Positions 1 to 18,899 of a stretch of 64,000 nt of DNA are shown here, in pieces. The notes below the pieces were generated by a model. The model saw nothing but the letters and a program-made list of their open reading frames with translations. It was not told the origin of the DNA and did not search any database. This DNA comes from Octopus sinensis (Eukaryota): the NCBI RefSeq assembly GCF_006345805.1, contig NC_043004.1, positions 50,840,001 to 50,904,000 of the forward strand. Reading direction: 5' to 3'. The stretch's first letter is position 1. Each line of letters begins with the position of its first letter. Position numbers and translations under genes: made by a program.

Positions 1-2902
1 GCTACATTCACCCATCTTTTTTTAAAACATTCACTAGACAAAACTTGCCTCTCTACTCTCACTTTTTTCTTCAAGTGATACTTGAAGAAGTTGATGAGAG
101 GTTGACCAGAGAGGAAAGTGTTTGTCTCTAATCCTTTCAGACGCGTCCACCAGATACATTCTTTCGCCATAGCCACAAGTATGATAAAAATAGCTCTTCC
201 TTCCCGTTTGAAGGAAGGAGGCGTGACGATATTAACGATAGACTCGGCTGATAAACCGACACGTCCCACACGTGACAGCAGTCGTTCGACATAAGCCCAC
301 AGGTGGGAAATTGCTGGACACTGCACGATTGCGTGCAGAGCGGTTTCGTCGCTCTGCCCGCATCTCGGGCAGGTCGGCCCCGTGTTTCTCGAGCCATGCC
401 TATAGAGCTTATCCCGAACGGGTAGCGCTTCTCGGTAGCACCGCCAGGCCAGGGATCTCTGGAAGTTGTCCATAGGTTCCGGGCCGAAAGTCGTTTGAAA
501 CAGGCGGGTCAGGTATTCCTCGTCGACGCCCAGGTTTGCCCCGAGCTCGTCGTCGTACCTCCCCTCCACTAATCCCCTATAGAATGCTTTGGTTGTGTTG
601 AAGTCACTCAAGGTCGACCCGGGACGGCAGAGTTGCTTGAGAGCAACGCGACACTCGCGGTGTCATTCGCCCTTCTTCGGCCTCTTTTTGATCCACGACT
701 GTAGTTCGGTCATGGAGACGAGTTGCGGGAATGCGTGCCTCACAAACGGCGACCACACCTGTTCACCGTCGTCTACATAGAGCCGGAGATGTCGCAGTCT
801 CAGCGCGTGTCTGCGCATCATCAACCACGGCATGCCCAGCCCTCCTTTTAACGGGTGTTGACAGCAAATGGATCGCCTGACCATCGGGACGCATCCTTTC
901 CACAAGAAGCGGAAGAGGATATGTTCTAGTTTGGTGATGGTAGGGTCGGGACAAGGTACGACGGTCAGGCGGTAGTAGATGATGGACGCGATGTACGCGT
1001 TCACCACCTCCGCCCGACCTTTTAGGGACAGTTTCCTCTCGGCCCATTGCTGGGCGAGAGTGACCACCCTACTCGTTATCTCGTTCCAGTTCTTCTCCAT
1101 TTGGAGGTCCGGACCGAACCAGACCCCGAGCAACTCAACCGGGCCGTCTGTCCAGCGTCCCACGACGGAGGTACTGGTGGACGGCATGGGATTGCTTCTC
1201 CAGGTGCCGAGCCGCAAGCCCACTGACTTTTCCCGGTTGATTTTTGCTCCTGTCACCGCTTCGTAGTCTTTCAGTGTCTCGCCGACCCGCTCGATGTGCT
1301 CGTGGCTTGACACTATGACGGTGACGTCGTCCGCGTATGCAGACACGCTCGTCCCGCATCCTAATTCTCGCGGGATGCCCCTCAGAGTCGCCAGCTTCCG
1401 CAGTAGTGGCTCAAGAGTCAATACGTATAGAAGCGCCGAGAGGGGGCATCCGTGACGGACCGAACGTGCAATGTCGAAGGGTCTCGATAGATGTCCATTT
1501 ACGCGAATTACCGAACGGATGCCTCTGTACAAGGCAGCTATCCAGCCGCGGAAGACGGGACCGAAACCAGCCGCTCTCAGGACTGCCTCCAAGTATCAAT
1601 GGTCTACCCTATCAAAGGCTTTCGATTGATCCAAGTTGATCAGGGCCCCACCCATGCCAGGTTCGTTAACTACCCTGTCCATGATGTAGCGCATCAGATG
1701 GAGGTTGTCATGGATGCTCCGGCCCGGCACGGCGCACGTTTGTGCGTTGTCGACCAGTTTCTCCATGACAAGCGCCAACCTCTTGGCTAACACCTTTGTC
1801 AAAATTTTCAGGTCTGCATTGAGCAGAGTGATTGGCCTAAAGTTATCTATAATGTTTCCCTTGTTTGGATCTTTCTTCAGCAGAGTTACAGCTCCTCGAC
1901 TCACAAAACCAGGTATGCTCCCGTTTTGCTGCCAGTTGCAGTATACCGCTGCCAAGACGTCTCCAAACAAGTCTGGCATACAATAGTAAAATTCGTAGGG
2001 TAGACCATCCAAACCCGGTGATTTGTCCCTCGAGCATTCTGCCATCGCTTCCCGCACTTCCGCCGCCGTGATGGCACCTTCGCAGCACCCTGCCTTTCTT
2101 GTCGAGAGTCGTGGCAGGCTATGTAGGTAGGCACTGAAGTCTACCCTACGTTCTTGCCCTCCACTCGTCCCGAACAGTCGGGCAAAATGCTGCTGAAAGG
2201 CCTCACACATTTTACTTGGCTCGAGCAATTCGCGCCCCTGTTCATCTACCAGTGACCGAATGGTGGCTTTGTTGCCCTGTTGCGCCTCTGCCACCCGGCC
2301 TCTCTCGCGGCTCCAACACCTTCGTTCCTTAGAGCACGCATCCTAGCTCTGACAGCACATCCTTCGTGTTTGGCGTTGAAGTGTTGGTCGAGGGCCAACC
2401 TCGCCGCCAAAACGTCGGATGCGATGCCGCTTCTAATTGCCTCTTCTAGCTTCTTAACTAGCTCACCCTCTACTCTATTTCTATCTATGGCTAGTGCTTT
2501 GCTGTACCTAATCGCTTCTGCTTTCACTGCTCTCTTGAGGGCAAACCACCATTTGTTGTTGATGATGGCTCCCGTCAAAGCCCTCTTTACTAGTGTGCTA
2601 ATCCGGTCTCTGAAAACTTGTCTGGACGGGAATGATACGTTCAGTTTCCAGTACCCAGGACCCTGTCTATGTGCCTTATCTAAGTCTAGCGTACACGTCA
2701 CCAATTTGTGATCCGTGTAGCTGAATTGTGGACATCCTAAGTTATCCTTGTCTACTGTCCTACACAGTATCCTATCTAGATATGATCTCGACGACCCACT
2801 GCGGTTGCTCCATGTCCACGTTGGTGCATTTGGGTGGTCGAGTCGGTACCTGTCAGACAGTTGGAATCGTCTGAGCAGGTCTCTGAGGCATTTGCATCCC
2901 CT
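1..2902 (-). mobile_element. Tx1/L1-clade non-LTR retrotransposon ORF2 (C-terminal APE, RT, CCHC knuckle), 5'-truncated and disrupted; runs off the left edge
   Basis: Minus-strand frames give APE end (TWTWSNRSGSSRSYLDRIL, YTDHKLV), RT motifs (SPGLDGLPYEFY, NFRPITLLNADLKILTK, DQSKAFDRVDH, GCPLSALLY, YADDVTV) and CPRCGQSDETALHAIVQC. In-frame stops at ~663 and ~1594, frameshift near 2280. The 5' end abuts (GATA)n at 2903. Confidence 0.92.
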
Positions 2903-2968
<66 letters not shown>

Positions 2969-3071
2969 TAGATAGATAGATAGATAGATAGATAGACAGA
3001 CAGGCAGACAGACAGATAGACAGATAGATAGGCAGACAAATAAATAGAGAGACAGAAAGACAGAAAGATAG
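2903..3071. repeat. (GATA)n/(GACA)n microsatellite
   Basis: Direct reading. Confidence 0.95.
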
Positions 3072-3855
3072 TGTAAGAATTAGCACTTCCTTCTCAAAGC
3101 TTGGATTCGAAATCAGACCCAAGAATCATTGGTCGTAAAATACCAATGCACAAAAAGGCGCGAAATCAGAATCTCTTTGTTCTGACAAAAAATGATGGAT
3201 CGTCTCCCTTCGACCTCTGACCCGAGCAGGTCAGGCGAAGTTTAACAGGACGACCAGCGACCTACTGTACGCAATAACACTCTTGCGGTATATCTATTTT
3301 TCTGGCTATTTGAGATGTTATAAATAGAACGGAGAAATAGGTATCTGGAGAGAAGCCGAACCAACGTTTAAGAGAACGTCACGCATTTATGAGGACGACG
3401 AAAGAATATTCAGAAAGGTGACTCTGTACTGCATGATTTACACACACACACACACACACACCATCAAACATATTCTGCTTTAATGTGTATCCTGTATTAT
3501 GCATTCCTTTAATATGTATTATTTGCAACCACTATTTAATATGCATTTTGTACAAGCGATGTGTAACATTGCTTACAAATTGATGTAGTGATAATAAATC
3601 TTTAATTTATTACAAAGCACTTATGTATTTATTAATACATCCACGCATCCACTACAATAGAGACACACATATTTGCTTGAATATGCGGTCATAAAACATT
3701 TTACTTAGTCACATGTTCGTTCACTGATTTCCTAAAAAATGTGACACTTCCTACATGTGTACGCCTACATTTTCTTTAAGAAAACTGTTATTTTTTTTAT
3801 TTAAATTGCAACACACTGATGACATTTAGTGCTCTCCTTACCCCTACTCCGCCTT

Positions 3856-3944
<89 letters not shown>

Positions 3945-4005
3945 TTCTTGTTGATTAGTCGGGTTTCATTTCACTATTATATAAACGTGTAATCTTCCTG
4001 TTACA
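3072..4005 (+). repeat. LTR copy 1 (TGTAA...TTACA), near-identical to 8185-9111
   Basis: Starts TGTAAG and ends GTTACA (5-bp terminal inverted repeat). Differs from copy 2 by a few SNPs/indels and microsatellite lengths. No PBS follows it. Confidence 0.8.
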
Positions 4006-4165
4006 ATTCGTCCGTCTCGTACAATCTATCTCACAGCCATACATTTTCCAGTCTTAACTCGCATTTAGAATGTGGCTTCCACAAAGATATTGCTTTAGTT
4101 TACCACTCTTTAAATAAACATTATATACATGCATAATACATACATACATACATACATACTACATG

Positions 4166-4239
<74 letters not shown>

Positions 4240-4240
4240 C

Positions 4241-4306
<66 letters not shown>

Positions 4307-4565
4307 GTACAGATCTGTATATATATGTATGTATGTAGGCGTAGGAGCGGCTGTGTGGTAAGTAGCTTGCTTACGAACAACATGGTCTCGGGTTCAGTCC
4401 CACTGCGTGGCACCTTGGGCAAGTGTCTTCTACAATAGCCTCGGGCCAACCAAAGCATTGTCAGTGGATTTGGTAGGCGGAAACTGAAAGAAGCCCGTCG
4501 TATATATATGTGTATGTGTGTGTATATATGTTTGTGTGTCTGTGTCTGTGTCTGTCACCCCCAAC

Positions 4566-7500
4566 GGAAGTCAGCATCATCCCAGTCTCCAACACTTCTG
4601 GAAAAAGAAAAGAGACATCAGTCTGTCTTCAGGCAGTCAACCATTCACCCATTCCAACCTACGGTGAACAGTCCCTAACATTAAACATAGGACTACGCCG
4701 CACATTTCAGTGGGTATTCGTCGTCGCTAAACTGCCGACCCCTATCTTAGGAGCCGATTTCCTGCATCATTTCGGTCTCCTGGTAGACATAAAGAACAGA
4801 CGACTTGTCGACACCACCACCAAGCTTACTGTGCGCGGTATAGCCGCTCGAATGGACACAGTCAGCCCAACTGTAATGCTTACGACAACGACTCGTCACA
4901 GTTCCATCCTGAATGATTATCCAGATGTCGCCCGGCCAGTTTTTCATAACCAGCCGATAAAGCACGACGTTACCCACCACATCAAAACCAGCGGTCCACC
5001 TATCGCTGCAAGGCCCAGAAGGTTACCACCTGATCGTCTCCAGGCCGTCAAGCGGGAATTCCAGCACATGCTCGACCTCGGAATCATCCGCGTTTCCAGC
5101 AGCAACTGGTCCTCGCCGATACACTGCGTCCCAAAAAAATCATCGACCGATTGGCGGGTTTGCGGCGATTATCGATCACTGAATAAAAGCACTATCAGTG
5201 ATGCCTATCCGGTGCCTTTTCTTCAGGACTTTTCGAGCTCGCTGCATGGAGCTCGCATCTTTTCAAAAATCGACCTGGTGCGAGCATACAACCAAATCCC
5301 AGTCGAACCTGCAGACATCTCAAAGACAGCAGTGACTACACCTTTCGGAATGTTTGAATTCCTGCGTATGCCTTTCGGTTTACGAACGCGGCACAGACAT
5401 TCCAAAGGTTTATCGACATGGTGACTAGAGGTTTGCCTTTCGTCTCTATGCCTACATAGACGACATACTCGTGGCCAGTAACTCGGACGAAGAGCATAAT
5501 CAACACCTTCACCTGCTATTCGAACGTTTACGTAAATTCGGAATTGTTATCAACCCTACCAAATGTTTGTTCGGAGTTGCTTCCCTCATTTTCTCGGCCA
5601 TATAGTCGATAAAAATGGAATTCGTCCCCTTCCCGAGAAAGTCAAGGCCATCGTGGATTTTCCACCACCCACATCTCTCCGCAAATTAAGGGAATATCTC
5701 GGTCTAGCGAATTTCTATCGACGGTTCGTGCCCCACCTCGCTGAAATAGCGCAACCGCTCACGGATTTGCTACGTCAGCGAACCTGCAAAAACGCAGATA
5801 TAGCTCTGACCGAAGATCAACTCGTTTCTTTCGCTGCCCTGAAAAAAGCGTTATCTAGCGCTACCATGTTGGTTTATCCAAAACCAGACGCCCCACGATG
5901 TTTACTCGTTGATGCATCCGATTCCGGAATCGGAGGTGTGCTACAACAGCTTGTTGACGGTATATGGCAACCGTTGTCTTTCTTTTCTAAGCGGTTAAAA
6001 CCCGCGGAAACCAAATACAGCACATTCAGTCGGGAATTATTGGCGGCATACCTGGCCGTTAAGCATTTCCGTCATATGCTAGAAGGTACCAATTTTGCCA
6101 TATATACCGACCACAAGCCATTAGTATACGCATTTAACACCAAACCGGATCGCCATTCGCCGAGAGAAATTCGTCACCTCGACTTCATATCGCAGTACAC
6201 GACGGATATACGCCACATCAAAGGGACGACCAACGTGGCAGCCGATGCACTTTCACGTGCGCAGATCAATGCTATCCACACCACGTCTACAATTGATCTG
6301 GCACGTATAGCAGCTGACCAGGAGAATGACGAAGAACTTCTAAAGCTCCGGAATTCGTCATCTCTGAAATTTCAGCATGTTCCACTACCATCATCCACAG
6401 CCCATATATGGTGTGATATTTCCACTGGTTACCAACGCCCTTATGTACCACAGAAATATCGTCGAGAAGTTTTCTCCGCTCTACATTCTCTGTCACATCC
6501 TGGTATTCGCTCCACTCAAAAGCTAATATCGACCCGTTTTGTGTGGACCAGTATCAACAAGGATATCAGAGAATGGACCAAGTGCTGTGTTGCGTGCCAA
6601 AAAGCGAAAATCCACCGGCACATAAAATCACCAATCGGTTCATTTTCGCAGCCCGATGCACGATTTCAGCACGTTCACATTGATATCGTTGGACCCCTGC
6701 CACCTTCGCAGAACTATTCATATCTGCTAACTTGCGTAGATAGGTTCTCGCGATGGCCCGAAGCCTGGCCCCTATCTGATATATCAGCAGAAACGGTCGC
6801 TAAAACGCTGATATCACAATGGGTTTCGCGTTTTGGCACACCCGCAACAATTACCACCGACAGAGGACGTCAGTTCGATTCCCACCTTTTCACCGAGCTG
6901 ACTCGTCTCCTCGGGTGTAAACACCCGCACTACAGCTTACCACCCTGCAGCAAATGGTATGGTGGAACGCTTTCACCGCCAACTCAAGGCATCTATAAAA
7001 GCAGCTCCAGACAGTTCTCACTGGTTGGAACATCTCCCTCTCATCCTCCTTGGAATTCGATCCACGATTAAGGAAGAACTGGGATATACTCCGGCCGAAC
7101 TCGTTTATGGCACAACACTCACCTTACCTGGGCAGATGATCGAACCTGTTTCACAAAACTTCCCTGACCCACAACAATATGTGCACCGATTACGAACATC
7201 CATGTCGCAAGTATCACCCTCAGGCCCCAGACAACAGAACGTCGTTTCACGTGTCCCAAAAGATATCAACACATGGACTCATGTCTTCGTGAGGAATGAT
7301 GGGATACCCTCTCAACTTCGACCACCATATTCCGGGCCCTACAAGGTCATCAAAAGAGAACCCAAGTATTTCGTCCTCGATATTGGAGGTAAACGAAATA
7401 CGGTCTCGATTGATCGTTTAAAAAAAGCTTTCATCGAGGAGGACTTACATTCAGTCCCCTCTTTTCCTCAAACAGACTCGGCAACTCCAGCGAACACCAC

Positions 7501-7612
7501 AGATGCTGCACAACCCCGACACACCAAATCAGGAAGAACAGTTCGATGGCCAGCAAGGTTCGTGCAAGTTTTTCGGGTAAGTTCTGAACTCCTAACGTAT
7601 CCATCTTCCTAA
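4566..7612 (+). pseudogene. pol: Ty3/Gypsy pol (PR-RT-RNaseH-integrase), CsRn1/Kabuki/Boudicca-like, frameshifted, starts mid-protease; gag absent
   Basis: ILGADFL; [46 protein letters not shown] (~5450); [20 protein letters not shown]; HSLSHPG...CVAC; [31 protein letters not shown]. Domain order is Gypsy-type. Frameshifts near 5390, 5450, 5580, 6920. Confidence 0.95.
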
Positions 7613-8171
7613 TGAACACATAACTGCATCACCCACCCAGAGAAATCAAAGAACATTTGTGTACGTAAAGAAAAAAAAAATGAAAACAAAAACTGTCTGT
7701 ATGAACTTTTACGGAACATTTCAAAATCGAACTTTGCCGATGAACATTTCTTTCATTTTTGCATGTACATATTTTTTGTTTTCTTTTCAAAATGTTTGCT
7801 TTCTCATAAATATATTTTTTTGCTAACTGTATATCCACACACATTTACAAATCTTGTTCTCCTGCGTGCTATCACTCGATTTTTTTTTTCTCCACTGAAA
7901 GATACCTTGTCTCTATTAGACCTCTAGTAGGTCGAGTAATCAATAGACGCACATCTCTTTCAACGTGCCAACATAATTCTGCCTGGGCACATATACATAT
8001 TGCCCACCATATAGCACATACAAATTGTAAACCTTTCATCCATATTTTTATCGTTCAATGTGTAAAAAAAAATTTTTTTCTACATGCACACAATCAAAAA
8101 AAAAAAAATAAAATAAAAATAATAATAATAATACATTTCCAATATCGTTCGATCTCTGTGGCTTTCTCACT

Positions 8172-8184
8172 AGAAGGTGGGTAG
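8172..8184 (+). other. Polypurine tract of the Gypsy element
   Basis: AGAAGGTGGGTAG immediately 5' of LTR copy 2. Confidence 0.75.
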
Positions 8185-8969
8185 TGTAAGAATTAGCACT
8201 TCCTTCTCAAAGCTTGGATTCGAAATCAGACCCAAGAATCATTGGTCGTAAAATACCAATGCACAAAAAGGCGCGAAATCAGAATCTCTTTGTTCTGACA
8301 AAAAATGATGGATCGTCTCCCTTCGACCTCTGACCCGAGCAGGTTAGGCGAAGTTTAACAGGACGACCAGCGACCTACTGTACGCAATAACACTCTTGCG
8401 GTATATCTATTTTTCTGGCTATTTGAGATGTTATAAATAGAACGGAGAAATAGGTATCTGGAGAGAAGCCGAACCAACGTTTAAGAGAACGTCACGCATT
8501 TATGAGGAACGACGAAAGAATATTCAGAAAGGTGACTCTGTACTGCATGATTTACACACACACACACACACACACCATCAAACATATTCTGCTTTAATGT
8601 GTATCCTGTATTATGCATTCCTTTAATATGTATTATTTGCAACCACTATTTAATATGCATTTTGTACAAGCGATGTGTAACATTGCTTACAAATTGATGT
8701 AGTGATAATAAATCTTTAATTTATTACAAAGCACTTATGTATTTATTAATACATCCACGCATCCACTACAATAGAGACACACATATTTGCTTGAATATGC
8801 GGTCATAAAACATTTTACTTAGTCACATGTTCGTTCACTGATTTCCTAAAAAATGTGACACTTCCTACATGTGTACGCCTACATTTTCTTTAAGAAAACT
8901 GTTATTTTTTTTATTTAAATTGCAACACACTGATGACATTTAGTGCTCTCCTTACCCCTACTCCGCCTT

Positions 8970-13943: not shown

Positions 13944-15640
13944 GGTAATTTTTTTTTTGTGTAACACCCGCACGATCTTCACTAAGAAGAAAAAAATCGA
14001 ATTTTTGTGCGTGGATTCAAGTGCCCTGACATCCTAATATGCTGCAAATCCCTTATTTTGGTTCGGAAAAAGAGGGGTGGGGCGAGGTGGGGACACCCTC
14101 CATCCAGGATTCATTGGAAAATTTTCGTTGAATGAATTCCTGTGACCTCCTAATGTGCTACAAAACCCACATTAATATAACTAAGTCTTATCTTTGGGCT
14201 TCCTGTAAGGTTTGTAAATAGTCCTATTTATATGCACATATAAATAGGCGCAGGAGTGGCTGTGTGGTAAGCAGCTTGCTTACAAACCACATGGTTCCGG
14301 GTTCAGTCCCACTGCGTGGCACCTTGGGCAAGTGCCTTCTACTATAGTCTCGGGTCGACCAAAGCCTTGTGAGTGGATTTGGTAGACGGAAACTGAAAGA
14401 AGCCCGTCGTATATATGTATATGTCCCCGTTACTTAGCGGTTCGGCAAAAGAGACCGATAGAATAAGGGCTTACAAAAAGAATAAGTCCCGGGGTCGAGT
14501 TGCTCGATTAAAAGGCGGTGCTCCAGCATGGCCGCAGTCAAATGACTGAAACAAGTAAAAGAGTAAAAGAATATATAGGCGCATGTGTGGGTGTGTAATG
14601 TATGAGTTTCACGTGAGTGTGTGTGTGTGAGTATATGCATATAGGCGTATGTACGCGGGTGTGCGTGTGCGCATGTGTATGTATGTACATGCACGTTGAC
14701 GCGATTTCTATGAGCCTTTTTAGTTCCTTACTTTCTCCCCTTCGCCCCCCCCTCATCCTTATTTAACGGTCATTCTAATAGCTCCTTTGTCTTAATAACG
14801 GTCAATTACATAGTAATTTCCCTTTGTTTAACGGTCATTTTTATAGCATTTTTTGATTGCCTCAATAACTGACGAGATGCCGGAGCAGTTTTCCGCCCCG
14901 ACATCCGAAACTCGGAGTATTCTTATGGCAACTGAATAATTGTCACATACTGTATATTACAAATAAATTCCTCTATTTACATAAATATCGAGGTTTCATT
15001 CATTTTTGTTGTCTTACCATTACCATTACTAATAATATATAAAAGGGTTTTGTAGCATATTAGGAGGTCACAAGAATTCATTCAATGAAAAAAAAAAATT
15101 CCAATGGTTCCGGGATGGGGGGGGACCCTTCGTCCCACCCCCTTTTTTCCGAACCAAAATAAGGGATTTGCAGCATATTAGGAGGTCAGGGTACTTGATT
15201 CCACCAAAAAATCCGATTATTTTTCCTTAGTGAAAATCGTGGTGGTGAAAAGTTCAATGGGTGTGGGGTGGGGTGAAATTTCCGAGGCTTCCACCTTACT
15301 CCACCCCGTTTTTCGGACCCCAAAAAGGGATTTGGTGTGTGTGTTTGTGCCCCTAGCATTGCTTGACAACCGATGCTGGTGTGTTTACTTCCCCGTCACT
15401 TAGCGGTTCGGCAAAAAAGACCAATAGAATAAGTACTGGGCTTACAAAGAATAAGTCCCGAGGTCGATTTGCTCGACTAAAGGCGGTGCTCCAGCATGGC
15501 CGCAGTCAAATGACTGAAACAAGTAAAAGAGTAAAAGAGTAAAGGGTAATATTGGAAGGTCAGGGTACTTGATTCCATGCAAAAAATCCGAGTTTTTTTT
15601 TTTCGTGAAAATCGTGCGAGTGTTACACAAAGAAATTACT
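13944..15640. mobile_element. Non-autonomous long-TIR DNA transposon (Merlin-like termini) with nested SINE pieces
   Basis: Left arm ~13944-14205 is inverted at ~15040-15245 and 15548-15640. Termini GGTAATTT/AAATTACT. Identical 8-bp flanks GATAAATC at 13936-13943 and 15641-15648. Confidence 0.7.
14863..14928 (+). ncRNA. Hammerhead-ribozyme-like motif (type I, imperfect stem I) in a Penelope-type terminal remnant
   Basis: CTGACGA-GATG...CATC-C-GAAA-CTCGGAG-TA; stem I weak. Confidence 0.5.
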
Positions 15641-16669: not shown

Positions 16670-16713
16670 AGCAGTATCAACGTCAACTATATCAAATGAA
16701 CAGATATAGTTAG

Positions 16714-16730
16714 TAGCTATAGTGATTGTC
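16714..16730 (+). promoter_or_regulatory. Conserved upstream element TAGCTATAGTGRTTGTC at -46..-30 of tRNA-Met (also 17062-17078, 18147-18163, 18498-18514)
   Basis: Same motif at exactly the same distance before all four tRNA genes, although the intervening spacers differ. Confidence 0.6.
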
Positions 16731-16759
16731 ATCATTAACAAGTGACTTTGTTGCCAACT

Positions 16760-16854
16760 GCCTCGGTAGCGCAGTAGGCAGCGCGTCAGTCTCATAATCC
16801 TGATCTAGCAATCGAGTAATCTGAAGGTCGTGAGTTCGATCCTCACCTGGGGCA
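16760..16854 (+). tRNA. trnM-CAT: tRNA-Met(CAT) elongator, 22-nt intron at 16797-16818
   Basis: Cloverleaf: GCCTCGG/CTGGGGC acceptor, GCGC D stem, TCAGT-CTCATA|A-TCTGA anticodon arm with U31-U39 as in eukaryotic elongator Met, GTGAG-TTCGATC-CTCAC T arm; 73 nt after intron removal; T-run terminator follows. Confidence 0.95.
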
Positions 16855-17107
16855 CAACTTTTTTTTTCTAAAAATAATTTTTTTTTTTTTTTTAAATTTA
16901 AATATATTGTGTGTATATTATATACAACTAATCAGAAATTATGATTTTTACGTAGTCATATAGCAAATTGTAAGAATGAGTAGAGGGGACGGAGTGAAGA
17001 GACAGAGTTTTTGCGTGTGTGTTATGAATATAGGCGGGCAGGAATTATCGACAACAACTTTTAGCTATAGTGGTTGTCTTCCTAAACAAAGACACCTGTC
17101 GTTAACT

Positions 17108-17202
17108 GCCTCGGTAGCGCAGTAGGCAGCGCGTCAGTCTCATAATCCTAATCTAACAGCCGAGTAATCTGAAGGTCGTGAGTTCGATCCTCACCTGGGG
17201 CA
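17108..17202 (+). tRNA. trnM-CAT: tRNA-Met(CAT) elongator, 22-nt intron at 17145-17166
   Basis: Exons identical to copy 1; intron ATCCTAATCTAACAGCCGAGTA; T-run terminator. Confidence 0.95.
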
Positions 17203-17719
17203 AGCTTTTTTTAAAATTTAAAGGTAATTTTTTTTTATGTTTCTTTTTATCTATGGACAGTTTACTGTCCTTTATATGATTATCTTTCCGCCATAAATGT
17301 GTTGTGTGTGTGTGTCCGTGCATGTCTTTGGGTTGTGTTTGTCCCCCACCCCAATTGATAACCGGTGTTGGTGTGTTAGAGCAAGTCGATTTACATCCAC
17401 CCTACTATTCAGCTGGTACATATTTTATCGTACCCAAAAGGATGAAAGACAAAGTTGACCCAAATCGGAATTTCATGAAATGCCGCTAAGCATTTTGCCC
17501 GGTGCGGTGTCGATTCTGCCAAGCTTGCCGCCTTTTATTTAGAGCTAATATCGGTATTGTATACAAATAAGCAGTTGTTGTGATTATATGTGCGTGTGAC
17601 TATATATTATAACAGTGGGGGAGAGAAAGAGACAGGGTGTGTGAGTGTGTGTGTGCGAGTGTGGGTGTGTATGTATGCGCGCGTGTGTTGCATATTGCAT
17701 AAATGCTGTCAGCAACAAC

Positions 17720-18128
17720 AGGCGTAGGAGAGGCTGTGTGGTAAGTAGCTTGCTTACCAACCACATGGTTCCGGGTTCAGTCCCACTGCGTGGCACCTTG
17801 GGCATGCGTCTTCTGCTATAGCCTCGGGCCGACCAAAGCCTTGTGAGTGGATTTAGTAAACGGAAACTGAAAGAAGCCCGTCGTATATATGTATATATAT
17901 ATATATGTGTGTGTTTGTGTTTGTCCCCCCCCCCCAACATCGCTTGACAACCGATGGTGGTGTGTTTACGTCCCCGTAACTTAGCGGTTCGGCAAAAGAG
18001 ACCCTTCGAATAAGTACTAGGCCTACAAAGAATAAGTCCTGGGTCGATGTGCTCGACTAAAGGTGGTGCTCCAGCATGGCCACAGTCACATGACTGAAAC
18101 AAGTAAAAGAGTAAAAGAGTAAAGAGTA
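17720..18128 (+). mobile_element. SINE family A, full copy between the two tRNA pairs
   Basis: Same head, central microsatellite and tail as 9426-9839. Confidence 0.9.
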
Positions 18129-18192
18129 ACAACGACTTGTGCTGAGTAGCTATAGTGATTGTCTTCCTAAACAAATACTCCGACGCTTAGTT

Positions 18193-18287
18193 GCCTCGGT
18201 AGCGCAGTAGGCAGCGCGTCAGTCTCATAATCCTAATCTAGCAATCGAGTAATCTGAAGGTCGTGAGTTCGATCCTCACCTGGGGCA
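18193..18287 (+). tRNA. trnM-CAT: tRNA-Met(CAT) elongator, 22-nt intron at 18230-18251
   Basis: Exons identical; intron ATCCTAATCTAGCAATCGAGTA; T-run terminator. Confidence 0.95.
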
Positions 18288-18543
18288 CAACATTTTTTTC
18301 TTTTTTCTAAAAATAAATTTTTTTTTTTAAATTTAAATATATTGTGTGTATATTATATACAACTAATCAGTAGTTATGATTTTACGTAGTCATATAGCAA
18401 ATTGTAAGAATGAGTAGAGGGGACGGAGTGAAGAGACAGAGTTTTTGCGTGTGTGTGTTATGAATATATGCGGGCAGGAATTATCGACGACAACTTTTAG
18501 CTATAGTGGTTGTCTTCCTAAACAAAGACACCTGTCGTTAACT

Positions 18544-18638
18544 GCCTCGGTAGCGCAGTAGGCAGCGCGTCAGTCTCATAATCCTGATCTAACACCCGAG
18601 TAATCTGAAGGTCGTGAGTTCGATCCTCACCTGGGGCA
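18544..18638 (+). tRNA. trnM-CAT: tRNA-Met(CAT) elongator, 22-nt intron at 18581-18602
   Basis: Exons identical; intron ATCCTGATCTAACACCCGAGTA; T-run terminator. Confidence 0.95.
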
Positions 18639-18899
18639 ACCTTTTTTTTAAATTTAAAGGTAATTTTTTTTTGTTTCTTTTTATCTGAAGACAGTTTACT
18701 GTCCTTTATATGATTATCTTTCCGCCATAAATGTGTTGTGTGTGTGTGTCCGTGCATGTCTTTGGGTTGTGTTTGTCCCCCACCCCAATTGATAACCGGT
18801 GTTGGTGTGTTTACGTCCATATAGGTAAAAGAGCTGATAGAATAAGTACCAAACTTTAAAATAAGTACTAAGATCGATTTGTTCGATTGAAAAAAATTA

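What the first reader, a model, noticed from the sequence alone, without database searches (positions are those of the whole stretch)
16760..18638. Four intact elongator tRNA-Met(CAT) genes, each with a 22-nt canonical intron
Seen: four identical 73-nt exon sets, each split after position 37 by a 22-nt intron and followed by an oligo-T terminator. All four introns end in CGAGTA, so C32-U33-C34 can pair with GAG and C32 faces the antepenultimate intron G (the anticodon-intron pair used by TSEN), while the intron middles vary. Established: in well-studied animals tRNA introns sit mainly in Tyr, Leu(CAA), Ile(UAU) and Arg(UCU); intron-bearing elongator Met is characteristic of plants. Inference: a lineage-specific intron gain that makes elongator Met supply depend on tRNA splicing. 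Invariant exons with variable introns argue for selection rather than SINE-like decay.
Basis: partly seen in the sequence, partly recalled or inferred. Interest (0 to 1): 0.8.

Follow-up and report, generated by a model that had tools for sequence, protein, structure and literature searches.

The report
Octopus elongator tRNA-Met genes with introns
Four working-looking octopus genes for the methionine tRNA each carry a short intron, and the same intron turns up in snails, corals and many other marine animals, so it is an old, overlooked feature and not an octopus invention.

Summary
Four tRNA-Met(CAT) genes lie on the + strand at 16760-16854, 17108-17202, 18193-18287 and 18544-18638. Their 73-nt exons are identical, each has a 22-nt intron after position 37 ending in CGAGTA, and each is followed by a run of 7-9 T. 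They are elongator type and look functional.

The window comes from Octopus sinensis or a very close relative.

The interpretation of a lineage-specific intron gain is not supported. A pattern scan found at least 120 metagenome contigs (137 gene copies, 96 different introns of 13-35 nt) with the same kind of gene interrupted at the same place. One such contig is from a stony coral, judged by its histone H1. A separately found assembly contig is from a Gigantopelta-like gastropod, judged by a 95% identical neighbouring HYPK gene.

The introns share their ends: AUC at the 5' end and G-A-G at -5 to -3. No intronless elongator Met gene occurs in about 0.68 Mb of fetched loci.

The intron therefore probably predates the split of cnidarians and bilaterians and was lost in vertebrates, flies and nematodes. 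The conserved AUC copies the first three bases of exon 2. That fits pairing of a box C/D guide for Cm34 across the exon-intron junction, as reported for plants and archaea, but this was not tested.

The parts
16760..16854 (+). tRNA-Met(CAT) elongator gene c1 (A-type): exon 1 16760-16796, intron 16797-16818 (ATCCTGATCTAGCAATCGAGTA), exon 2 16819-16854
   Evidence: ARAGORN -i; Rfam tRNA 51.9 bits
17108..17202 (+). tRNA-Met(CAT) elongator gene c2 (B-type): exon 1 17108-17144, intron 17145-17166 (ATCCTAATCTAACAGCCGAGTA), exon 2 17167-17202
   Evidence: the canonical pre-tRNA fold is the minimum-energy fold once the tRNA body is constrained
18193..18287 (+). tRNA-Met(CAT) elongator gene c3 (A-type, recent duplicate of c1): exon 1 18193-18229, intron 18230-18251 (ATCCTAATCTAGCAATCGAGTA), exon 2 18252-18287
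18544..18638 (+). tRNA-Met(CAT) elongator gene c4 (B-type, recent duplicate of c2): exon 1 18544-18580, intron 18581-18602 (ATCCTGATCTAACACCCGAGTA), exon 2 18603-18638
16859..16867 (+). T9 run, RNA polymerase III terminator of c1. The equivalents are 17206-17212 (T7, c2), 18293-18299 (T7, c3) and 18642-18649 (T8, c4)
16714..16733 (+). Conserved upstream box TAGCTATAGTGRTTGTCWTC, starting 46 nt before each gene; also at 17062-17081, 18147-18166 and 18498-18517. It is shared by A- and B-type genes although the rest of their flanks has diverged. Possibly an upstream promoter element (inference)
   Evidence: 4 matches in the window, all at the four genes; 0.03 expected by chance
16700..17382 (+). 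Two-gene module 1 (c1 + spacer + c2 + about 180 bp). It recurs at about 18133-18818 as module 2 with 96-98% identity
17720..18129 (+). tRNA-derived SINE copy lying between the two modules. It is not part of the tRNA-Met genes
   Evidence: Its 32-nt core at 17764-17795 recurs 12 times in the window; its tail repeat also occurs at 15500-15549

Best explanation
These are four functional, RNA polymerase III-transcribed genes for cytoplasmic elongator tRNA-Met in an octopus genome. Transcription uses the internal A box (TAGCGCAGTAGG) and B box (GAGTTCGATCC) and stops at the downstream T-run. The 95-nt precursor folds as a cloverleaf in which C32-U33-C34 pair with the intron's G-A-G at -5 to -3. This gives the anticodon-intron pair C32:G(-3) and leaves the 3' splice site in a small loop. 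The tRNA splicing endonuclease (TSEN) removes the 22-nt intron between positions 37 and 38, and the RTCB ligase joins the halves into a 73-nt tRNA. The array arose in two steps: an old duplication into A- and B-type genes, then a recent duplication of the A+B module. The intron is not an octopus or cephalopod novelty. It belongs to an old, widespread intron family in animal elongator Met genes, with ends AUC...GAG-N-N and lengths of 13-24 nt (two non-animal-looking genes reach 35 nt). The family is present at least in cephalopods, a gastropod and stony corals, and was probably lost in vertebrates, insects and nematodes. Shown here: gene structure, conservation, distribution. Inferred: transcription, splicing, single ancient origin. 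The conserved 5' AUC copies A38-U39-C40. It may let the box C/D guide that methylates C34 pair with the precursor across the exon-intron junction; this is a hypothesis.
For: Gene calls and scores. Elongator features read from the sequence: G1:C72, T54, C60, and no run of three G:C pairs in the anticodon stem. In contrast, all 14 intronless tRNA-Met genes in the related loci have the initiator form AGCAG...GGGCCCATAACCC...GATCGAAAC. A-type versus B-type genes: exons 73/73 identical; intron 18/22; upstream -50..-1 36 of 49 aligned bases; downstream 67 of 86 aligned bases plus 28 gaps. The canonical fold scores -24.2 kcal/mol and is the body-constrained optimum for c2 and c3. Distribution: 1 hit in a bacterial assembly that is probably host contamination, and at least 120 metagenome contigs. 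These hold 137 copies, of which 134 are complete and give 106 distinct precursors and 96 distinct introns. Position +1 is A in 94/96, +2 is T in 94/96, +3 is C in 86/96, -3 is G in 94/96, -4 is A in 86/96 and -5 is G in 70/96. A run of four or more T follows within 20 nt in 132/134 copies. Acceptor-stem pairs 5:68 and 7:66 change on both sides, and 99.3% of cells are paired. Coral origin of L038: all named histone H1 hits at 73-90% local identity are scleractinians; the only other named hit, a shrimp, is 48% identical. Gastropod origin of L131: the tRNA lies about 120 bp from a HYPK gene 95% identical to that of Gigantopelta aegis. No intronless elongator Met gene among 151 tRNA-Met calls in 134 loci. 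Introns of Tyr-GTA, Ile-TAT and Gly-GCC on the same contigs do not copy their own exon 2 (0-1 of 3 bases identical in the well-parsed cases), so the AUC is specific to elongator Met. In plants and archaea the first bases of the elongator Met intron take part in the duplex with the Cm34 guide (bioRxiv 10.1101/2023.06.22.546166).
Against: There are no expression, splicing or modification data. Only three lineages are tied to a named taxon; most metagenome contigs are unplaced, and a few clearly come from non-animals (L034 and L056 carry very long uninterrupted ORFs). The loci were selected for intron-bearing genes, so the absence of intronless copies is biased. In c1 and c4 a G at intron position +6 allows a competing stem (G26-G30 with intron positions +4 to +8) that is predicted to be 2.3-3.5 kcal/mol more stable than the canonical fold. 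This might reduce their splicing. No box C/D guide was found, and the Rfam scan of the window gives only the four tRNAs at gathering score. The shared intron ends could also reflect common constraints instead of common descent.
Confidence: 0.75

Rival explanations
1. One reading: the intron was gained recently in the cephalopod or octopus lineage, making this an unusual lineage-specific dependence of elongator Met supply on tRNA splicing.
For: Published surveys of GtRNAdb report animal tRNA introns essentially only in Tyr, Ile(UAU), Leu(CAA) and Arg(UCU). I found no paper describing elongator Met introns in invertebrates.
Against: An intron at the same position with the same end motifs occurs in a Gigantopelta-like gastropod, in a scleractinian coral contig and in about ten further acceptor-stem classes from several dozen samples. 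One metagenome contig (L012) has exons identical to the octopus ones but a different, 24-nt intron, plus a second tandem copy.
Confidence: 0.05
2. Several independent gains: elongator Met genes acquired introns repeatedly in different animal lineages by the same mechanism, for example a local duplication starting at A38. That would explain why introns begin like exon 2, and TSEN requirements would then shape the 3' GAG.
For: In the coral class the 13-nt intron ATCTGAATTAGAA starts with a 7-nt copy of exon 2 (ATCTGAA), as a tandem duplication would give. Intron lengths and middles differ completely between classes. The two non-animal-looking genes (L032, L034) keep the 3' GAG but not the 5' AUC, so the 3' motif is a general requirement.
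Against: It needs many parallel events at one site in one tRNA. AUC is kept even where bases +4 and +5 no longer resemble exon 2, which points to constraint on an old sequence. Other intron-bearing tRNAs on the same contigs show no such copying. Every elongator Met copy seen has the intron.
Confidence: 0.15
3. The four copies are dead or silent genes: tRNA genes disabled by a 22-nt insertion, or SINE-like tRNA-derived repeats. On this view the real elongator Met tRNA comes from intronless genes elsewhere.
For: Only 64 kb of the genome was examined. The region is packed with tRNA-derived SINEs, with 12 core matches. c1 and c4 are predicted to misfold.
Against: Exons are 73/73 identical between A- and B-type genes whose flanks are only about 73-78% identical. 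The cloverleaf is complete and scores 51.9 bits. Every copy has a terminator and a conserved upstream box. There is no SINE body or tail attached. The anticodon-intron pairing motif is kept in all four genes and in 94/96 related introns.
Confidence: 0.05

Closest known systems
Plant nuclear elongator tRNA-Met genes with a canonical intron (for example Arabidopsis eMet-CAU, 11 intron-bearing genes)
   Same: Same isoacceptor and, as far as the cited papers say, the same canonical intron site in the anticodon loop. The intron is short. Its 5' end is reported to take part in pairing with the box C/D guide for Cm34. tM(CAU) introns are listed as typical of plants and fungi.
   Different: The exon sequences here are of the animal type; my recollection is 70/73 identity to human elongator Met, which I did not check with a tool. 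Arabidopsis also has intronless elongator Met genes that cannot pair with the guide. Whether the animal and plant introns are homologous was not tested.
The standard metazoan intron-bearing tRNAs: Tyr-GUA, Ile-UAU, Leu-CAA, and Arg-UCU in vertebrates
   Same: Canonical 37/38 position, short length, anticodon-intron pair, and presumably the same TSEN/RTCB pathway. Tyr-GTA (11/11), Ile-TAT (5/5) and Leu-CAA (2/2; at least one of these two is an ARAGORN mis-parse of an elongator Met gene) carry introns on the same metagenome contigs.
   Different: A different isoacceptor, one that two 2025 surveys describe as essentially intronless in animals. The elongator Met intron begins with a copy of exon 2's first three bases, which the Tyr, Ile and Gly introns on the same contigs do not.
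Archaeal elongator tRNA-Met and tRNA-Trp introns linked to box C/D-guided 2'-O-methylation of C34
   Same: An intron next to the anticodon of a tRNA whose C34 is ribose-methylated by a guide RNP. The guide pairs across the exon-intron junction.
   Different: Archaeal introns sit in a strict bulge-helix-bulge motif. Here only a 3-bp anticodon-intron helix forms: A35 faces C(-6) and there is no inner helix (sequence). No guide RNA was identified here.
Human elongator tRNA-Met-CAT, Cm34 guided by SNORD97/SCARNA97
   Same: Nearly identical mature tRNA; the anticodon arm and T arm are identical by my recollection. It is the same target site for the guide.
   Different: The human genes have no intron.

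Membership tests
Eukaryotic nuclear elongator tRNA-Met gene | Complete cloverleaf scoring above the curated tRNA threshold, with anticodon CAT | tested here: met
   Rfam RF00005 51.9 bits against 29, model positions 1-71 of 71, for all four genes. ARAGORN calls tRNA-Met(cat).
Eukaryotic nuclear elongator tRNA-Met gene | Elongator and not initiator: G1:C72 (initiators have A1:U72), T54 and a pyrimidine at 60 (initiators have A54 and A60), no three consecutive G:C pairs at the bottom of the anticodon stem | tested here: met
   Read from the sequence: G1...C72, T-loop TTCGATC, anticodon stem TCAG(T)/(T)CTGA. The initiator genes found in related loci have AGCAG..., GGGCCCATAACCC and GATCGAAAC.
Eukaryotic nuclear elongator tRNA-Met gene | Internal pol III promoter (A and B boxes) and an oligo-T terminator | tested here: met
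   A box TAGCGCAGTAGG at positions 8-19, B box GAGTTCGATCC, and T7-T9 runs starting 4-6 nt downstream. The consensus comparison is from memory of TRGCNNAGTGG and GGTTCGANNCC.
Eukaryotic nuclear elongator tRNA-Met gene | Transcribed, processed, charged with methionine | not testable with these tools
   No RNA data are available.
Canonical protein-spliced tRNA intron (TSEN substrate) | Intron between positions 37 and 38, preceded by a purine at 37 | tested here: met
   A37 precedes the intron. Placement is ambiguous by up to 3 nt because of the ATC/ATC repeat, but only 37/38 gives the anticodon-intron pair.
Canonical protein-spliced tRNA intron (TSEN substrate) | Anticodon-intron base pair: nucleotide 32 pairs with intron nucleotide -3, and the 3' splice site is unpaired | tested here: met
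   C32:G(-3), U33:A(-4) and C34:G(-5) in all four genes. The predicted fold leaves the last two intron bases (-2, -1) plus A38 and U39 unpaired. G at -3 occurs in 94/96 related introns.
Canonical protein-spliced tRNA intron (TSEN substrate) | The precursor adopts the splicing-competent fold | tested here: inconclusive
   It is the body-constrained optimum for c2 and c3 (-24.2 kcal/mol). For c1 and c4 a competing stem is 2.3-3.5 kcal/mol better. Thermodynamic prediction ignores tertiary structure and bound proteins.
Canonical protein-spliced tRNA intron (TSEN substrate) | Intron removal observed | not testable with these tools
   No RNA data are available.
Archaeal-type bulge-helix-bulge intron | 3-nt bulge, 4-bp helix, 3-nt bulge, with an inner helix inside the intron | tested here: not met
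   The central helix has only 3 bp (A35 faces C at -6), and +2/+3 (U, C) cannot pair with -7/-8 (sequence).
tRNA-derived SINE or tRNA pseudogene | Decayed cloverleaf, a tRNA-unrelated body and simple-repeat tail, many dispersed diverged copies | tested here: not met
   The exons are identical and intact, and the sequence ends at a terminator. The exon strings occur only at these four sites in the window. The true SINE in this window has a different head and 12 diverged copies.
Elongator Met precursors targeted by a box C/D guide across the exon-intron junction (plants, archaea) | A guide RNA whose antisense element pairs with nucleotides about 30-37 plus the first intron bases, placing C34 at the fifth pair from box D/D' | not testable with these tools
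   No guide gene lies in the window, and the octopus genome could not be searched. Indirect support: the intron 5' AUC equals A38-U39-C40 in 86-94 of 96 introns and is specific to elongator Met.

The most novel reading that the evidence does not exclude
The elongator Met intron is ancestral to animals, and perhaps homologous to the plant, fungal and archaeal elongator Met introns. On this reading it is kept because Cm34 is installed on the precursor: the conserved intron start AUC extends the duplex with a SNORD97-family box C/D guide to about 11 bp (G30 to intron +3). Vertebrates, insects and nematodes could lose the intron because the mature sequence A38-U39-C40 offers the guide the same pairing. 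That would give a concrete, testable function for a tRNA intron in animals and would correct the textbook list of animal intron-bearing tRNAs.
Probability: 0.2. Interest if true: 0.65.

Novelty: new member of a known kind. Interest (0 to 1): 0.4.

Why it matters
Two recent surveys state that animal tRNA introns are essentially confined to Tyr, Ile(UAU), Leu(CAA) and Arg(UCU). Both rest on GtRNAdb; my recollection, not checked here, is that its animal genomes are mostly vertebrates, flies and nematodes. The data here show that this list is incomplete. Molluscs (octopus and a gastropod), stony corals and many unplaced marine eukaryotes interrupt their elongator Met genes, and in the sequence examined they do so in every copy. 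This changes the picture from a plant and fungal peculiarity to a probably ancient intron lost in the model animals. It means that in these animals all internal AUG decoding may depend on TSEN and RTCB. The elongator Met-specific conservation of the intron's first three bases also gives a direct handle on the open question of what tRNA introns are for. For this window alone, though, the finding is an ordinary, well-formed tRNA gene cluster.

Tried and rejected
1. ARAGORN in default mode does not recognise the intron and mislabels the genes; the intron option was needed.
2. The viral contig scan gave nothing.
3. Five literature searches found no paper describing elongator Met introns in invertebrates, and a search for the 'CRYPA' SUP05 assembly found nothing.
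4. A search with the transposon pol ORF did not identify the organism; the best hit was 63% identical, with a broad spread across animals.
5. I first took L129 (O. sinensis CM016878.1) to be the window's own locus. BLAST showed it is only another copy of the same LTR retrotransposon, 98.96% identical over 4.2 kb. The exact genomic position of the window is therefore not established.
6. I looked for the coral tRNA next to histone H1 in the named Orbicella faveolata and Desmophyllum pertusum assemblies. There is no tRNA within 10 kb of those H1 paralogues.
7. Cluster look-ups of neighbouring ORFs on L122, L130, L132, L133 and L134 gave no named relatives.
8. I considered an intron-internal hairpin or a bulge-helix-bulge motif as the reason for the conserved ends. 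Positions -7 and -8 are not complementary to +2 and +3, so I rejected this.
9. I considered that copying of exon 2 by the intron start is a generic property of tRNA introns. Tyr, Ile and Gly introns on the same contigs do not show it, so I rejected this.
10. From memory I suspect the Ga0056xxx and Ga0209xxx contigs (class GCCTAGG) come from gutless marine worm metagenomes. I could not verify this and do not rely on it.
Full report
OBSERVATION. The region holds four tRNA-Met(CAT) genes on the + strand at 16760-16854 (c1), 17108-17202 (c2), 18193-18287 (c3) and 18544-18638 (c4). ARAGORN run with introns allowed reports each as tRNA-Met(cat) with a 22-nt intron starting at gene position 38. In default mode the same program reports only three genes, all mislabelled. 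Rfam's tRNA model matches all four end to end at 51.9 bits, against a gathering score of 29, with a 24-nt insertion in the anticodon loop. The 37-nt exon 1 and the 36-nt exon 2 are each present four times as exact strings and nowhere else in the window. The introns are ATCCTGATCTAGCAATCGAGTA, ATCCTAATCTAACAGCCGAGTA, ATCCTAATCTAGCAATCGAGTA and ATCCTGATCTAACACCCGAGTA. All end in CGAGTA, and positions 6, 12, 15 and 16 vary. T-runs of 9, 7, 7 and 8 start 4-6 nt after the genes. Every factual statement in the finding is therefore correct.

WHAT KIND OF GENES. They are elongator and not initiator genes. They have G1:C72, the T-loop TTCGATC (T54, C60) and the anticodon stem TCAG(T)/(T)CTGA. The intronless tRNA-Met genes I later found in related loci have the classic initiator form: AGCAG..., GGGCCCATAACCC and GATCGAAAC. 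The A box (TAGCGCAGTAGG) and B box (GAGTTCGATCC) are intact.

ARRAY STRUCTURE. The four genes are not independent. A module of roughly 0.7 kb (c1, a 253-bp spacer, c2 and about 180 bp beyond) recurs about 1,434 bp downstream at 96-98% identity, and a tRNA-derived SINE lies between the two modules. Within a module, the A-type gene (c1, c3) and the B-type gene (c2, c4) are an older duplication. Their exons are 73/73 identical and their introns 18/22. The 50 bp upstream match at 36 of 49 aligned bases, and the 100 bp downstream match at 67 of 86 aligned bases with 28 gaps. Zero exon changes against roughly 25% flank divergence means purifying selection or gene conversion. A 20-nt box, TAGCTATAGTGRTTGTCWTC, starts 46 nt upstream of each gene and occurs only there in the window (4 matches, 0.03 expected by chance). 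It may be an upstream promoter element; that is inference.

PRECURSOR STRUCTURE. The canonical precursor fold consists of the cloverleaf body, a 4-bp anticodon stem, and C32-U33-C34 paired with the intron's G-A-G, with the last two intron bases plus A38 and U39 unpaired. It scores -24.2 kcal/mol in all four genes. It is the optimum for c2 and c3 once the tRNA body is constrained. In c1 and c4 the G at intron position 6 creates a 5-bp competing stem between G26-G30 and intron positions 4-8. That stem is 2.3-3.5 kcal/mol more stable and dominates the predicted ensemble. Whether this matters in vivo is unknown. The motif is the relaxed eukaryotic type and not an archaeal bulge-helix-bulge, because A35 faces C(-6) and there is no inner helix. 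Both the intron and exon 2 start with ATC, so the excised 22 nt could formally be placed anywhere from 37/38 to 40/41. Only 37/38 puts G at -3 opposite C32.

ORGANISM. The window ORF 6959-7612 is an exact match to a protein in NCBI, and its 90%-identity cluster contains only Octopus sinensis proteins. The Octopus sinensis assembly GCA_006345805.1 holds a copy of the same LTR retrotransposon that is 98.96% identical over 4.2 kb. That copy is a different insertion and not the window's own locus. The window is therefore from O. sinensis or a very close relative, and its exact position is not placed.

IS THE INTRON LINEAGE-SPECIFIC? A 2025 PNAS analysis of GtRNAdb (576 eukaryotic genomes) places tM(CAU) introns in plants and fungi (PMC12168002). 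[quoted passage not shown] I then scanned public collections for the animal-type elongator Met anticodon arm and T arm separated by an insert: GTCAGTCTCATA N{6,36} TCTGAAGGTCGTGAGTTCGA. Viral contigs gave nothing. The bacterial and archaeal genome set gave one low-coverage contig in a SUP05 symbiont assembly, probably host DNA.

WHAT THE RELATED LOCI SHOW. The fetched contigs carry 137 gene copies, of which 134 are complete. These fall into about ten recurrent acceptor-stem classes, 106 distinct precursors and 96 distinct introns of 13-35 nt, from several dozen samples. A run of four or more T follows within 20 nt in 132 of 134 copies. Across the recurrent classes the acceptor stem shows changes on both sides at pairs 5:68 (CG, AU, UG) and 7:66 (GC, UA, AU, CG), with 99.3% of cells paired. 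The anticodon and T arms were fixed by the search pattern and so say nothing. One contig, L012, has exons identical to the octopus genes but a 24-nt intron, plus a second tandem copy with compensated T-stem changes.

TAXONOMY OF THE RELATED LOCI. Three anchors could be established.
- The window itself is octopus.
- L038 belongs to the class with acceptor stem GCCTCGTT and introns of 13-14 nt (26 copies with the main exon sequence). It carries a histone H1 gene. Apart from one shrimp protein at 48% identity, every named hit is from a scleractinian coral, at 73-90% local identity: Orbicella faveolata 88%, and also Desmophyllum, Montipora, Pocillopora and Porites.
- A search with the peptide read across the minus strand of c4 found 21 spurious ORFs that span intron-bearing elongator Met genes. 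One of them lies on a 786-kb assembly contig (L131), where the tRNA (19-nt intron ATCACAAATACATAGAGCA) sits about 120 bp from a HYPK gene 95% identical to that of the deep-sea gastropod Gigantopelta aegis.
The intron is thus present in two molluscan classes and in a cnidarian. A few contigs are clearly not animal (L034 and L056 have very long uninterrupted ORFs), and most remain unplaced.

SHARED ANATOMY OF THE INTRONS. In the 96 distinct introns, +1 is A in 94, +2 is T in 94 and +3 is C in 86. Position -3 is G in 94, -4 is A in 86 and -5 is G in 70. The 3' G-A-G is the partner of C32-U33-C34 and is the expected requirement for the anticodon-intron pair. It is kept even in the two non-animal-looking genes with 35-nt introns. 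The 5' AUC is not an expected requirement of the splicing enzyme. It equals the first three bases of exon 2 (A38-U39-C40). In the coral class the copy extends to seven bases (ATCTGAA). On the same contigs the introns of Tyr-GTA, Ile-TAT and Gly-GCC genes share only 0-1 of their first three bases with their own exon 2. The copying is therefore specific to elongator Met.

DO THESE ORGANISMS HAVE INTRONLESS ELONGATOR MET GENES? ARAGORN found 151 tRNA-Met genes in about 0.68 Mb across 134 fetched loci. All 14 without an intron are initiators, and every elongator copy has the intron. As a check, Tyr-GTA (11/11) and Ile-TAT (5/5) carry their expected introns. Leu-CAA is also 2/2, but at least one of those two calls is a mis-parse of an elongator Met gene. 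The loci were selected for intron-bearing genes, so this is suggestive only. For the octopus genome the question stays open.

MECHANISM. The best-supported reading is the ordinary one. Pol III transcribes the gene, TSEN cleaves at 37/38 and at the 3' site, guided by the mature domain and by the C32:G(-3) pair, and RTCB ligates the halves. These steps are inferred from the known pathway and were not shown here. For the conserved AUC I propose, as a hypothesis, pairing with the box C/D guide that methylates C34. In human cells SNORD97/SNORD133 guide Cm34 of elongator Met. The same study reports that in Arabidopsis and archaea the first bases of the elongator Met intron take part in the guide duplex, and that intronless Arabidopsis elongator Met genes cannot pair with the guide (10.1101/2023.06.22.546166; archaeal background in PMC7994747). 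With the standard geometry (my knowledge), the methylated base is the fifth pair from box D/D'. The duplex would then run from G30 through A37 into the intron. An intron that begins AUC gives the guide the same 11 contiguous pairs as the mature tRNA, which would explain both the conservation and its sharp end after +3. No guide gene is in the window, so this is untested.

COMPARISON AND NOVELTY. Functionally and structurally this is a canonical eukaryotic tRNA intron in a tRNA already known to carry one in plants, fungi and archaea. What is new relative to the papers I could read is its presence, apparently in all copies, in molluscs and corals. With it comes the implication that the intron is old in animals and was lost in the model lineages. 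Automated genome annotation may well already record these genes, so I rate it a new member of a known kind, of moderate interest. The window itself is an ordinary tRNA gene cluster.

LIMITS. There are no RNA data. Only three taxonomic anchors exist. The metagenome scan was truncated and could not be repeated for intronless genes. I did not recover the human elongator Met sequence with a tool, so statements about identity to it are from memory.

Noticed in passing
window 16802, 17150, 18235, 18586 (intron position 6): G/A difference at intron position 6: G in c1 and c4, A in c2 and c3. This pattern cuts across the duplication history (c1~c3, c2~c4), so it needs a recurrent mutation or gene conversion. 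The G allele creates a predicted competing stem that is 2.3-3.5 kcal/mol more stable than the splicing-competent fold.
   Followed up: partly
window 16714-16733, 17062-17081, 18147-18166, 18498-18517: A 20-nt box, TAGCTATAGTGRTTGTCWTC, starts 46 nt upstream of each tRNA-Met gene and occurs nowhere else in the window. It is conserved between A- and B-type genes whose other flanks have diverged. It may be an upstream pol III control element.
   Followed up: partly
window 3069-8771: An LTR retrotransposon of the Ty3/gypsy kind. Its LTRs of about 590 bp lie at 3069-3657 and 8185-8770. The pol region is split over three ORFs (4510-5424 RT; 5563-7071 RNase H and integrase; 6959-7612), so the reading frame is interrupted at about 5424-5563 and about 6959-7071. 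A copy 98.96% identical lies in the O. sinensis assembly, and its last ORF is annotated as a protein in NCBI.
   Followed up: partly
window 663-2704 (- strand): A LINE-type reverse transcriptase split into at least two ORFs (RVT_1 hits in 663-1592 and 1596-2294). It is a degraded non-LTR retrotransposon.
   Followed up: no
window, 12 sites (e.g. 4381, 9472, 14290, 17764, 22230, 25570, 27545, 51840): The core of a tRNA-derived SINE (CATGGTTCCGGGTTCAGTCCCACTGCGTGGCA) occurs 12 times in 64 kb on both strands. One copy sits between the two tRNA-Met modules. Long (TG)n and TACA/TATG-type microsatellite arrays fill much of 21-55 kb.
   Followed up: no
L112 (ERZ1046148 NODE-3015), 1-7204: A marine metagenome contig with 41 tRNA genes in 7.2 kb, arranged as a repeat unit of about 5.4 kb at high coverage (78x). 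It includes an elongator Met gene with a 20-nt intron, which ARAGORN mislabels as Tyr(ata), an intronless initiator, and Gly-GCC and Tyr-GTA genes with introns. The organism is unknown.
   Followed up: no
L009, L016, L017, L073, L112 (water-column class): tRNA-Gly(GCC) genes with canonical introns of 14-18 nt ending GCAGAN/GCAGTG occur in the same unplaced organisms that carry the ATGAA...GGAGTG elongator Met intron. This is another intron outside the textbook animal set.
   Followed up: no
L011, L031, L049, L074, L077, L109, L117 and others (coral class): The 13-nt coral intron ATCTGAATTAGAA begins with a 7-nt copy of exon 2 (ATCTGAA). The precursor can therefore form a complete mature-like anticodon stem-loop using intron bases, and the excised 13 nt could be placed at any of eight positions. 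Some variants (ATCTGATATCAGAA) are near-perfect palindromes.
   Followed up: partly
L001 (FXLX01000321.1), 1-1007: A 1-kb contig at 0.55x coverage in an 'uncultured SUP05 cluster bacterium isolate CRYPA' assembly carries an animal-type elongator Met gene with a 17-nt intron and a decayed second copy. This is almost certainly host DNA in a symbiont genome bin. An identical gene lies on metagenome contig L040.
   Followed up: partly
L012 (Ga0233405_10001936), 230-640 (- strand): Two tandem elongator Met genes. One has exons identical to the octopus genes. The other has compensated T-stem changes (GTCGAGAG...CCTCTC). Their introns are 24 and 23 nt, and the genes sit next to Arg-TCT, Leu-TAA and Gly-CCC genes. 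The organism is unknown.
   Followed up: no
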